From Chrysemys picta bellii (taxonomy: Eukaryota), in contig NC_088807.1 of NCBI RefSeq assembly GCF_011386835.1, positions 25,730,001 through 25,794,000 on the forward strand: 64,000 bases of DNA, read 5' to 3'. The notes beneath the pieces were generated by a model. That model was not told where the DNA came from and ran no database searches. It was given only the letters and a program-made list of their open reading frames with translations. A program made the translations under genes and the position numbers. Numbering within the stretch: position 1 is the first letter of the stretch; each line of letters starts with the position of its first letter. This document shows, piece after piece, positions 45,613 through 48,600 of this stretch.

Positions 45613-48600
45613 ATGTCGGAGGTGGGGGAGCTCACCCAGACACCGCTGCAGAAAGTGTGGATCCCGCATGCCAGCAACCGGCTGCACCAGCGCAGGGGAT
45701 GTGAGTGGGGCATGGGGCCTGTCTCCTCTAGGGGGTTCTAACCCCAGGGTGGGGGGATATGAGGGTGCAGCTTGATTTGGGGGTCTGGCCTCTAGCCCCG
45801 TATCGCTAACGGTGTCTGTTCTCCCCCACACAACAGCCGCCGTGCCTCAGTTTACCAATTCGCCCACGATGGTGATCCTGGTGGGGCTGCCGGCCCGTGG
45901 GAAGACCTATATCTCCAAGAAGCTGACCCACTACCTGAACTGGATTGGGATCCCCACCAAGGGTGAGGTGAGGGGCGGGGCGGGGGACCAGGGCAGCTGG
46001 AGTCCGTGGAGCTGGCAGGGACAGAGATCTCGGGGGGGGGGGCAGGTCTCCGATTGTGGGGACAGGGTGGGTGTCTGTTGGGGGAGGATATCCCAGGGAG
46101 CTGTGGGGAGGGGCACGGGGACCCCAGCCCACCCCCCCACTCTCCCCGCAGTGTTCAACGTGGGGCAGTACCGGCGCGAGGCCGTGCAGACCTACCAGAA
46201 CTACGAGTTCTTCCGGCCAGATAACCAGGAGGCGATGCACATTCGCAGGTGAGGGGGTGACCCCAGCTGGGGCACTGCTGGGGGGAAGCTTGCGGCGCTG
46301 GGGGTGATCCCGCTTGGGGGCACTGCTGGGGGGAAGCTCACGGCGCTGGGGGTGACTCCGGCTGGGGGCATTGCTGGGGGGGAAGCTCACGGCGCTGGGG
46401 GTGACTCCGCCTGGGGGCACTGCTGGGGGGGAAGCTCACGGCGCTGGGGGTGACTCCGCCTGGGGGCACTGCTGGGGGGAAGTTTGCAGCACAGCCTGGG
46501 GGAGGGGTGGGGTATGTGTAAGGGTCTCACCCCTCCCCTCCCCTTGCCCCCAGGCAGTGCGCTCTGGCCGCTCTGAAAGACGTCCACACTTACCTGAGCC
46601 GGGAGGAGGGACAGGTCGCGGTAAGAGGGCCCCTCCCCCTGCCTCCCCCCAGCCAGACCCATGGGCCCATCTACCCCGGTCTCATGCCTGCTCCTATGTT
46701 CAGGTGTTTGACGCCACCAACACGACACGGGAGCGACGGAACATGATCCTGCAGTTCGCCGGCGACCATGGCTACAAGGTGAAGGGGGTGCGGGCGGGGG
46801 GGGGGGGGGGGGGCGGCATCGGTCTGGCCCAAGGCACTGCTGCAGTGGAAGTCCGCAGTACTATGGGGGCCTTGGCTGGGGGAAGCTCGCAGCGCTGGGG
46901 GGACTGCTGTGGGGAAGAGTGCAGCGCTGGGAGGGGCGGTGTCTAGCTGGGGGCACTGAAGGGGGAAGTGCGCAGCGCTGGGCTCTGCAGTCACTGTCAG
47001 ACCCACCTTAACACCCCCCCCCCCCAGGTGTTTTTCATCGAGTCCATCTGCGACGACCCGGATATCATCGAGGAGAACATCACAGTGAGAGAAACACCCG
47101 CCGGGGACCTGGCTGTCTCAGTGCCCCCCCCCCCCTGCCCCACACCCAGGGGGGGAGGTGGGCGGCCCGGGGTGTCCCCCCACAAACACACACACCCGGG
47201 GGGGGAGGCGGGCGGCCCAGGGTGTCCCCCCCCACACACAGACACACAGGGGGGGAGGCGGGCGGCCCGGGGTGTCCCCCCCACACACACACACCCGGGG
47301 GGGAGGCGGGCGCCCAGGGTGTCCCCCCACAAACACACACACACAGGGGGGGAGGCGGGTGGCCCGGGGTGTCCTCCCCACACACACACACACACACGGG
47401 GGGGGGAGGCGGGCGGCCCAGGGTGTCCCCCCCCACACACACACACCCCGGGGGGAGGCGGGCGGCCCGGGGTGTCCTCCCCACACACACACACCCCGGG
47501 GGGGAGGCGGGCGGTCGGGGTGTCCCCCCCCACACACACACACACAGGGGGGGAGGCGGGCGGGCGGGGTGTCCCCCCCCACACACACACACGGGGGGGG
47601 AGGCGGGCGGCCGGGGTGTCCCCCCCACACACACACACACAGGGGGGGGAGGCGGGCAGCCGGGGTGTCCCCCCCACACACACACACACAGGGGGGGGAG
47701 GCGGGCAGCCGGGGTGTCCCCCCCACACACACACGTGGGGGGGGCGGGCGGCCGGGGTGTCCCCCCCACACACACACATGGGGGGGGCGGGCGGCCGGGG
47801 TCCCCCCCACACACGGGGGGGCGGACCCCTCAGCTCCGGGCCCATCTCCCTGGTGTCCCCCCTGCAGCAAGTGAAGCTGAGCAGTCCGGACTACAAGGAC
47901 TGTAACCGGGAGGAGGTGGTGGAGGATTTCCTCAAGCGCATCGAGTGCTACCAGCTCCACTACCAGCCCCTGGACGACGAGCTGGACAGGTGAGACCCCC
48001 CCTTCCGCTCCGAGCGGGGCGAGAACCCAGGCGTCCTGGCTCCCAGACCCCCCCACTCCCCTGCCAGAGCCGGGGAGAGAACCCAGGCGTCCTGTCTCCC
48101 AGCCCCCCCCCACTGCCCTCCCAGACCTGGGACCCAGGCGTCCTGACCCCCTGCTCATCCCCCCCCAGCGCCCTGTCCTACATCAAGATCTTCAACGTGG
48201 GGCTGCGGTACCTGGTGAACCGGGTGCAGGACCACGTGCAGAGCCGCACCGTCTACTACCTGATGAACATCCACGTCACGCCGCGCGCCATCTACCTGAC
48301 CCGGCACGGCGAGAGCCGGCACAACCTGCAGGGGCGCATCGGGGGCGACTCGGGGCTCTCCCCCCGCGGCAAGCAGGTGGGGGCGGGGCACGGGGGCGAC
48401 TCGGGGCTCTCCCCCCGCGGCAAGCAGGTGGGGGCGGGGCACGGGGGCGACTCGGGGCTCTCCCCCCGCGGCAAGCAGGTGGGGGCGGGGCACGGGGGCG
48501 ACTCGGGGCTCTCCCCCCGCGGCAAGCAGGTGGGGGCGGGGCACGGGGGCGACTCGGGGCTTGGCGGAGGGATAGCTCAGTGGTTTGAGCGTTGGCTGCT

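What the first reader, a model, noticed from the sequence alone, without database searches (positions are those of the whole stretch)
48343..48560. In-frame 51-nt donor repeat could add 17, 34 or 51 residues to the PFKFB1 bisphosphatase domain
Seen: four identical CAAGCAG|GTGGGG donors exactly 51 nt apart. The unit is stop-free and encodes [17 protein letters not shown], re-creating the exon's own last 12 residues each time, so splicing from any of the four to 49112 keeps the frame. The site is about 20 residues after the catalytic RHG motif. Established: with identical duplicated donors the downstream one often competes well. Inference: a VNTR-encoded protein-length switch that could alter the kinase/bisphosphatase ratio and hence glycolytic flux, of possible interest in anoxia-tolerant turtles.
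Basis: partly seen in the sequence, partly recalled or inferred. Interest (0 to 1): 0.72.

Follow-up and report, generated by a model that had tools for sequence, protein, structure and literature searches.

The report
Splice-donor minisatellite in turtle PFKFB1
The end of one PFKFB1 exon and its splice signal are copied four times in a row into the next intron of a painted-turtle genome; this is a known kind of repeat in which the first copy normally does the splicing, and that is what the available RNA shows, so it is probably not a protein-length switch.

Summary
A perfect 51-nt x 4.4 tandem repeat (48340-48561) is built from the last 37 nt of PFKFB1 exon 8 plus the first 14 nt of intron 8. 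It gives four identical in-frame CAAGCAG|GTGGGG donors.

It is a minisatellite whose first unit straddles an exon-intron boundary. That class is known from human F7, IFI6, CBS, LMNB2 and PDGF (PMC1557585).

The duplication is old. Platysternon and Terrapene have 2 units and a Mauremys-like turtle at least 2-3. A sea turtle and Carettochelys have one. Only this genome, most likely Chrysemys picta bellii, has perfect copies. A SINE and two decayed units follow them.

RNA contigs of the same species join exons 7, 8 and 9 through the first donor (48376->49112). No contig carries a repeat junction, although contigs cannot exclude forms below roughly a quarter.

Its read support cannot be checked here.

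The intronic copies in relatives are frame-broken. The segment is length-invariant in 136 of 136 annotated PFKFBs. A fold of the +17 form loops the insert out beside the catalytic His.

Verdict: ordinary boundary minisatellite, a minor +17 isoform is possible, and a regulatory switch is unsupported. The scan noted the same architecture at two other genes of this window.

The parts
48169..48376 (+). PFKFB1 exon 8 (208 nt). It encodes ..[35 protein letters not shown]. The catalytic RHG lies at residues 45-47 of the exon translation.
   Evidence: The best solved-structure match is human liver PFKFB1, 1k6m, E 9e-34. Spliced RNA contigs give the junctions 47989->48169 and 48376->49112. RefSeq model P0252 matches at 100%.
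48340..48561 (+). Perfect 51-nt minisatellite, 4.4 units. Each unit is the last 37 nt of exon 8 plus the first 14 nt of intron 8 (GTGGGGGCGGGGCA).
   Evidence: TRF gives period 51, 4.4 copies and 100% matches. The unit alignment is A1.
48377..48382 (+). Authentic 5' splice site of intron 8 (CAG|GTGGGG, exon end 48376).
   Evidence: A 904-nt RNA contig of the same species (X13, depth 92) joins 48376 to 49112. A related turtle (X15, depth 1254) has the same junction.
48428..48535 (+). Three pseudo-donors identical to the authentic one (exon-ends 48427, 48478, 48529), each in frame with exon 9.
   Evidence: Motif scan. Donor 2 (48427) is the one used in RefSeq model P0252. No RNA contig uses any of them.
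48379..48559 (+). Four G-quadruplex-type motifs (GGGGGCGGGGCACGGGGGCGACTCGGGG), each starting 2 nt after a donor GT. A fifth, decayed one lies at 48765-48792.
   Evidence: Regex scan. Four G-runs per unit. A role in splicing or instability is inference only.
48562..48745 (+). Interspersed high-copy element (SINE-like, GGGATAGCTCAGTGG.. head) inserted into the fifth repeat unit.
   Evidence: Contig depth is 2.4-3.0 million against 14 for the flanks in a DNA run. It is absent from the orthologous introns of Platysternon and Terrapene. ARAGORN and Rfam do not recognise it.
48744..48827 (+). Rest of unit 5 and unit 6: decayed repeat units still 51 nt long, with donor-like motifs at 48762 and 48813. 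Their differences from the perfect unit are mostly CpG transitions.
   Evidence: Alignment A1 and difference list. Unit 6 is orthologous to the last unit of Platysternon and Terrapene, with the shared 3' end GTGGGGCAGGGATC plus the same tail.
48828..49111 (+). Remaining single-copy part of intron 8, with the polypyrimidine tract and acceptor.
   Evidence: It aligns with the introns of Platysternon, Terrapene and Eretmochelys. An unspliced contig covers 48827-49139 at depth 5 in X13.
49112..49258 (+). PFKFB1 exon 9 ([49 protein letters not shown]).
   Evidence: Translation, RNA junctions 48376->49112 and 49258->49366, and 49/49 identity to P0252.

Best explanation
This is an intronic minisatellite whose first unit straddles the exon 8 / intron 8 boundary of PFKFB1. 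The genome is most likely that of the painted turtle.

History. A tandem duplication of the exon end plus its 5' splice site arose in an ancestor shared with Platysternon, Terrapene and a Mauremys-like turtle. The array then evolved like other minisatellites. Its units were homogenised against the selected exon copy, it was split by a SINE, and upstream of the SINE it recently expanded to four perfect units.

Splicing. The spliceosome uses the most upstream (authentic) donor for the bulk of the mRNA, as in the human F7 boundary minisatellite, so the normal enzyme is made. The downstream donors are silent pseudo-sites, or at most give a minor by-product. One such by-product, a +17-residue form, is listed by RefSeq's automated annotation.

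Shown: the repeat, its phylogenetic spread, the canonical junction in RNA, and the existence of the RefSeq model. Inferred: that the first donor wins by position with help from the G-runs downstream, and that the array is selectively neutral.
For: Repeat anatomy.

Gene identity and the 14-exon structure.

RNA. X13, same species with 0 mismatches, has a 904-nt contig at depth 92 that runs exon 7 -> 8 -> 9 through 48376->49112 without a break at the donor. Its depth is zero over 48377-48521. X15, a related turtle, has the same junction at depth 1254, and a repeat-bearing contig at only 26.8.

Precedent (PMC1557585). Minisatellites with a first monomer across an exon-intron boundary are known in F7, LMNB2 and PDGF (first donor only) and in IFI6 and CBS (first donor plus the next two).

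No coding constraint on the intronic copies. The second unit of Terrapene is 52 nt, so out of frame. The X15 units carry +1/-1/+1 indels. The units after the SINE have D->A and G->S changes.

Concerted evolution. Each species' intronic unit shares that species' exon-specific base: T in the window, G in Platysternon.

Length constraint. 136 of 136 annotated PFKFB proteins keep 18 residues between G-K/R-Q and VWTS, and 16 other turtle models are canonical.

Background. The window is 19% minisatellite, and two other genes in it show the same architecture.
Against: RefSeq model XP_065427290.1 (P0252) of Chrysemys picta bellii uses the second donor. Such variants are normally proposed only where transcript alignments exist, so some real use of donor 2 is plausible. 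IFI6 and CBS show it can happen.

Contigs drop minor forms. A loop path below roughly a quarter of the main depth would be pruned, so X13 does not exclude a +17 form of up to about 20-25%.

Only one same-species RNA run was laid, and its tissue is unknown.

Platysternon's single intronic unit is still exactly 51 nt and reads [17 protein letters not shown].
Confidence: 0.7

Rival explanations
1. Constitutive use of the second donor (and perhaps the third), as in IFI6 and CBS. A measurable fraction of PFKFB1 mRNA would carry one extra 51-nt unit. It would give a stable enzyme with a 17-residue Gly-rich loop next to the bisphosphatase active site. This would be a by-product of the repeat, and no regulation is implied.
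For: RefSeq model P0252 has exactly this insertion and is otherwise 100% identical to the window's exons. The donors are identical and in frame, so there is no nonsense-mediated decay. The F7 paper reports authentic plus two pseudo-sites in use in IFI6 and CBS. The AF2 model of P0252:198-466 keeps the fold (pTM 0.71). The second copy forms the first helix (76-92) and residues 49-69 loop out at pLDDT below 50.
Against: No contig in X13 carries a unit junction, while the canonical junction contig has depth 92. Junction reads with 37 nt or less on the exon 8 side fit all four donors equally, so support for a computed model could come from placement (inference). Another RefSeq model of the same species (P0260) is canonical here. 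Confidence around the RHG strand falls from 80-84 to 49-53 in the +17 model. No annotated PFKFB in any other species has an insertion at this place.
Confidence: 0.2
2. One reading: a copy-number-variable repeat acts as a protein-length switch (+17, +34, +51 residues). The switch would tune the kinase/bisphosphatase ratio and glycolytic flux, possibly as an adaptation to anoxia.
For: Only the permissive geometry and the single +17 RefSeq model. The perfect identity of the four units shows recent expansion, so copy number may vary between individuals (inference).
Against: There is no evidence for +34 or +51 forms, or for regulation. The expansion is confined to this genome. Terrapene, in the same family, has one out-of-frame intronic unit. 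The array sits among many neutral minisatellites, including two other donor-reiterating ones in the same window. The insertion lies in an invariant-length loop/helix start beside the catalytic His.
Confidence: 0.04
3. The count of four perfect copies is an assembly error. The real allele would have about two units, as in Terrapene and Platysternon, or a different number.
For: It is the only 100%-identical array of 31 in the window. Perfect GC-rich repeats are error-prone in assembly. No read-level check was possible. DNA contigs of X10 leave a hole over exon 8 and most of the repeat.
Against: An independent sample (X2) has a contig across unit 4 -> partial unit 5 -> SINE, with its own G>A variant. 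In DNA run X10 the contigs laid on the repeat sum to depth 82.7 against 14 for single-copy flanks. That is suggestive of several copies, although the tool warns that depth is no copy number. RefSeq model P0252 requires at least two perfect units.
Confidence: 0.06

Closest known systems
Human F7 intron 7 37-bp minisatellite (Borensztajn et al. 2006, PMC1557585)
   Same: The first monomer spans the exon-intron boundary, so the authentic donor is followed by several pseudo-donors of identical sequence. The donor is of the G-rich type (UGG|gugggu there, CAG|gugggg here). Only the most upstream site is used physiologically, which matches the RNA contigs here.
   Different: The F7 unit is 37 bp with only 4 exon bases, so most pseudo-sites shift the frame. 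Here the unit is 51 bp with 37 exon bases, so every pseudo-site is in frame and re-creates 12 exon residues. Polymorphism of F7 (5-9 repeats) is documented, whereas here it is untested. No minigene test has been done here.
Human IFI6 (6-16) intron 2 and CBS intron 13 boundary minisatellites (as summarised in PMC1557585)
   Same: Boundary minisatellites in which the authentic donor and the next two pseudo-donors are all used. They are the precedent for a +1-unit mRNA like RefSeq model P0252.
   Different: There the extra-unit transcripts were shown experimentally. Here the +17 form is only a computed model and was not seen in RNA contigs. The insertion here would fall inside a catalytic domain.
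Human LMNB2 (100-bp) and PDGF (81-bp) boundary minisatellites (as summarised in PMC1557585)
   Same: The donor is reiterated 10-18 times and only the authentic site is used.
   Different: Their units are longer and their arrays larger, and the genes are different.
Known PFKFB1 isoform diversity (liver, muscle and fetal forms by alternative first exons; my own knowledge)
   Same: The window has both the liver-type first exon ([10 protein letters not shown].., with an RR-x-S site in exon 2) and an upstream alternative first exon (MEQKPTKIP) used by the RefSeq models.
   Different: Established PFKFB1 isoforms differ at the N-terminus. None is known to differ inside the bisphosphatase core.

Membership tests
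Boundary minisatellite that reiterates a 5' splice site (F7 / IFI6 / CBS / LMNB2 / PDGF class) | Head-to-tail array of units of about 10-100 bp | tested here: met
   51 nt x 4.4, 100% identity, plus two decayed units after a SINE.
Boundary minisatellite that reiterates a 5' splice site (F7 / IFI6 / CBS / LMNB2 / PDGF class) | The first unit contains the real exon end and the real donor | tested here: met
   The exon end at 48376 is proven by spliced RNA contigs and by protein homology. The unit is 37 exon nt plus 14 intron nt.
Boundary minisatellite that reiterates a 5' splice site (F7 / IFI6 / CBS / LMNB2 / PDGF class) | [quoted passage not shown] | tested here: met
   Four identical CAAGCAG|GTGGGG sites with identical 30-nt flanks.
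Boundary minisatellite that reiterates a 5' splice site (F7 / IFI6 / CBS / LMNB2 / PDGF class) | The most upstream donor is the one used (alone, or with the next one or two) | tested here: inconclusive
   The canonical junction is the only one in RNA contigs of X13 and X15. Contigs cannot exclude minor forms, and RefSeq model P0252 uses donor 2.
Boundary minisatellite that reiterates a 5' splice site (F7 / IFI6 / CBS / LMNB2 / PDGF class) | Copy number varies between individuals (VNTR) | not testable with these tools
   Only k=31 contigs were on offer. Between species the count runs 1 (Eretmochelys, Carettochelys), 2 (Platysternon, Terrapene), at least 2-3 (X15 turtle) and 6 in total here.
PFKFB1 (6-phosphofructo-2-kinase/fructose-2,6-bisphosphatase 1) | 6PF2K and His_Phos_1 domains, closest to PFKFB1 among the four paralogues | tested here: met
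   Exon 8 scores best against 1k6m, human liver PFKFB1 (117 bits, against 109 for PFKFB3). All exons match RefSeq PFKFB1 models of turtles. The C-terminus ..[11 protein letters not shown] and the liver-type first exon are present.
In-frame alternative 5' splice-site isoforms encoded by tandem donors (IFI6 type) | Transcripts that differ by whole repeat units are observed | tested here: inconclusive
   Only a computed protein model (+17 aa, P0252) exists. No RNA contig has a unit junction in the same-species run. No other cluster representative in the protein collection carries the insertion.

The most novel reading that the evidence does not exclude
Painted turtles really make PFKFB1 enzymes with one to three extra 17-residue loops beside the catalytic histidine. 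The number available would be set by a copy-number-polymorphic repeat, and the longer forms would have altered fructose-2,6-bisphosphatase activity, so that repeat length tunes glycolytic control.
Probability: 0.05. Interest if true: 0.6.

Novelty: new member of a known kind. Interest (0 to 1): 0.3.

Why it matters
It is a clean natural case of the old question of how the spliceosome chooses among identical 5' splice sites. There are four perfect copies, all in frame, so downstream use would escape nonsense-mediated decay and be visible in both RNA and protein. That makes it a better reporter than human F7.

It is also a caution for annotation. Junction reads with short overhangs fit all four donors, so computed isoforms at such repeats (one is already in RefSeq) need reads that cross a unit junction.

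For turtle metabolism it matters only if the +17 enzyme is made in quantity, and nothing here shows that.

Tried and rejected
RNA secondary structure as the reason for donor choice: the fold of 48310-48600 is no better than shuffles (z -0.17).

tRNA or Rfam identity of the SINE head and of the intron: nothing from ARAGORN, only noise from Rfam at E up to 1.

Open reading frame as evidence of coding: rejected, because all six frames of the unit are open.

Word search for insertion-bearing proteins of 130-413 aa: none among 120 listed. The high-coverage hits were read-through ORFs of other species. A second word search on the insertion region of P0252 found only canonical turtle models.

Look-ups of the genomic loci of P0252, P0121, P0123, P0248, P0249 and P0251 failed, because only the longest product of a gene is on record. 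Gopherus and Mauremys introns and the other Chrysemys isoforms therefore could not be read. A repeat cluster listing gave the same 15 members.

Copy number from reads could not be had. All runs were k=31 contigs, and DNA run X10 has a hole over exon 8.

Literature search for PFKFB1 in turtles found nothing on this repeat.

The spliced +17 form was studied only through the database protein P0252.

Full report
OBSERVATION

The sequence is as described. Tandem Repeats Finder gives one array at 48340-48561 with period 51, 4.4 copies, 100% matches and no indels. The motif CAAGCAG|GTGGGG ends at 48376, 48427, 48478 and 48529, each with identical 30-nt flanks. The unit is the last 37 nt of an exon plus the first 14 nt of the following intron. 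Read in the exon frame it gives [17 protein letters not shown] with no stop, and 51 nt is 17 codons. So joining any of the four donors to the acceptor at 49112 keeps the frame.

Two qualifications apply.
- All six frames of the unit are open because it is 82% G+C, so the open frame says nothing about coding.
- Two more, decayed, donor-like motifs lie at 48762 and 48813.

THE GENE

Exon 8 (48169-48376) matches human liver PFKFB1 (1k6m) best, at 117 bits against 109 for PFKFB3. A canonical 14-exon PFKFB1 runs from about 45.6 to 52.7 kb on the + strand. It has the liver-type first exon ([10 protein letters not shown]..) and the C-terminus ..[11 protein letters not shown].

RefSeq protein XP_065427290.1 of Chrysemys picta bellii (P0252) matches every exon of the window at 100%. 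The window is therefore most likely painted turtle. Spliced forms were examined only through database proteins.

WHAT SURROUNDS THE REPEAT

The fifth unit is interrupted after 18 nt by a 184-nt interspersed element (48562-48745). Its contig depth in a DNA run is 2.4-3.0 million against 14 for the flanks. After it come the rest of unit 5 and a sixth unit. Both are still 51 nt long but differ from the perfect unit at 4 and 8 positions, mostly CpG transitions. Each donor is followed 2 nt later by a four-G-run motif of G-quadruplex type.

The window as a whole is 19% minisatellite, and 33% between 24 and 49 kb. Two other genes in it have the same architecture:
- GACGGTAAGT five times after an HDAC6-like exon end (31380-31887);
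- CGTAGGTAYC thirteen times on the minus strand at 37103-37828.
Earlier notes of this scan had flagged both.

HISTORY

I read the orthologous introns of four other turtles.

| Species (locus) | State of the exon-end unit |
|---|---|
| Eretmochelys (L002) | single copy, followed by GTGGGGGCTGGCACCCATCG |
| Carettochelys (L003) | single copy |
| Platysternon (L001) | 2.1 units; intronic unit exactly 51 nt, reads [17 protein letters not shown] |
| Terrapene (L004, same family as Chrysemys) | 2 units; the second is 52 nt, so out of frame |

An RNA run from a related turtle (X15) has a contig with at least two intronic units carrying +1, -1 and +1 indels. That turtle differs by 2.4% in the exons, and its exon 9 starts FASALASF as in Mauremys.

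The last unit of Platysternon and Terrapene is orthologous to unit 6 of the window, because they share the 3' end GTGGGGCAGGGATC and the same tail. So the duplication predates the split of these families, and the sea turtle and Carettochelys lack it.

Within each species the intronic unit shares the exon's own species-specific base (T here, G in Platysternon). That is the signature of concerted evolution against the selected exon copy. Only the window has four perfect units, which means a recent local expansion. An assembly error is the alternative and is dealt with below.

RNA

One call could be made, and only on k=31 contigs.
- **X13** is the same species (0 mismatches). It has a 904-nt contig at depth 92 that runs through exon 7, exon 8 and 30 nt of exon 9, by 47989->48169 and 48376->49112. 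Its depth is zero over 48377-48521, while the 3' part of the intron is present at depth about 5.
- **X15** shows the same canonical junction at depth 1254. Its repeat-bearing contig has depth 26.8, about 2%, consistent with unspliced RNA.
- **X2** is DNA-like. It confirms unit 4 -> partial unit 5 -> SINE in another sample, with its own G>A at 48545.
- **X10** is DNA of a near-identical genome. It has a hole over exon 8. The contigs laid on the repeat sum to 82.7 against 14 for the flanks, which hints at several copies, but the tool warns that this is no copy number.

The limits are these. A perfect 51-nt repeat is a loop in a k=31 graph. A +1-unit mRNA cannot be told from a mixture of canonical mRNA and pre-mRNA, and a loop path below roughly a quarter of the main depth is likely pruned (my inference from how such assemblers simplify graphs). 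The contigs therefore show that the first donor makes the main mRNA. They do not show that the others are never used.

THE REFSEQ MODEL

Listing the members of the turtle PFKFB1 cluster gave P0252. It reads ..[28 protein letters not shown].., which is exactly one extra unit, donor 48427 joined to 49112.

Another model of the same species (P0260) is canonical at this junction. So are 16 other turtle models and all 136 annotated PFKFBs in which the segment could be measured.

Whether P0252 rests on reads that cross a unit junction cannot be checked here. Junction reads with 37 nt or less on the exon 8 side fit all four donors equally well.

PRECEDENT

Borensztajn et al. 2006 (PMC1557585) describe this class: minisatellites whose first monomer spans an exon-intron boundary.
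- In human F7 (37-bp unit), LMNB2 and PDGF, only the authentic, most upstream donor is used.
- In IFI6 (6-16) and CBS, the authentic donor and the next two are used.

PROTEIN CONSEQUENCE

In an AF2 model of the canonical turtle domain (P0001:119-370, pTM 0.75), the first helix of the phosphatase fold is residues 59-74. The exon junction (Q63|F64) lies five residues into it, and pLDDT is 80-94 from the RHG strand to the helix.

In the model of the +17 form (P0252:198-466, pTM 0.71), the second copy of SPRGKQ forms the helix (76-92). Residues 49-69 loop out at pLDDT below 50. Confidence around RHG drops to 49-53.

This is a prediction only. It says that the fold could survive with a floppy 17-21-residue loop next to the active site.

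VERDICT

This is a boundary minisatellite of a known kind and a new member of that kind. It is old in origin and recently expanded in this genome. The authentic first donor does the main work. A minor +17 isoform is possible: my odds are about 0.2-0.3 that it exceeds a few percent. A regulated, copy-number-driven protein-length switch is unsupported, at about 0.04-0.05. The copy number in the assembly remains unverified.

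Noticed in passing
window 31341-32069: An HDAC6-like exon end (..[14 protein letters not shown]) with its GTAAGT donor is reiterated. GACGGTAAGT occurs 5 times (31380-31887) in arrays of period 104-152. This is the same architecture as the PFKFB1 repeat.
   Followed up: partly
window 37039-37849 (minus strand): A WDR45-like intron is filled by a 38/79-nt minisatellite that carries CGTAGGTAYC 13 times on the minus strand. This is a third reiterated donor in the same window.
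   Followed up: partly
window 48562-48745: A SINE-like element is inserted inside repeat unit 5. Its contig depth is in the millions in a DNA run. It is absent from the orthologous introns of Platysternon and Terrapene, and ARAGORN and Rfam do not recognise it.
   Followed up: partly
window 48018-48129 (also 3890-4618, 42254-42848, 55922-56403, 62911-63427): A dispersed repeat of about 75 nt (..GAGAACCCAGG[AC]GTCCTGG..) forms many tandem arrays in the window. Its contig depth is about 236,000 against 14 for single-copy flanks.
   Followed up: no
window 47141-47814: PFKFB1 intron 6 is almost wholly a 49-nt minisatellite (13.9 copies, 87% matches) with embedded (CA)8 runs.
   Followed up: no
window about 43572-43598: An alternative first coding exon, MEQKPTKIP, is used by RefSeq models P0252 and P0260. 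It lies about 2 kb upstream of the liver-type first exon.
   Followed up: partly
P0001 (Platysternon megacephalum, L001): A PFKFB1 gene model is named 'interferon-induced guanylate-binding protein 1-like' in the source and lacks parts of the kinase domain. The locus has five N gaps.
   Followed up: no
P0036 (Pelodiscus sinensis, UniProt): This model has an odd junction, GKQ-QRQGGELAWGC-ALASF, at the same exon 8/9 boundary. It is probably a gene-model artefact.
   Followed up: no
P0260 (Chrysemys picta bellii): This RefSeq isoform has a canonical exon 8/9 junction but a different, frame-shifted C-terminal tail (..[25 protein letters not shown]) from alternative splicing of the last exons.
   Followed up: no
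   Followed up: no
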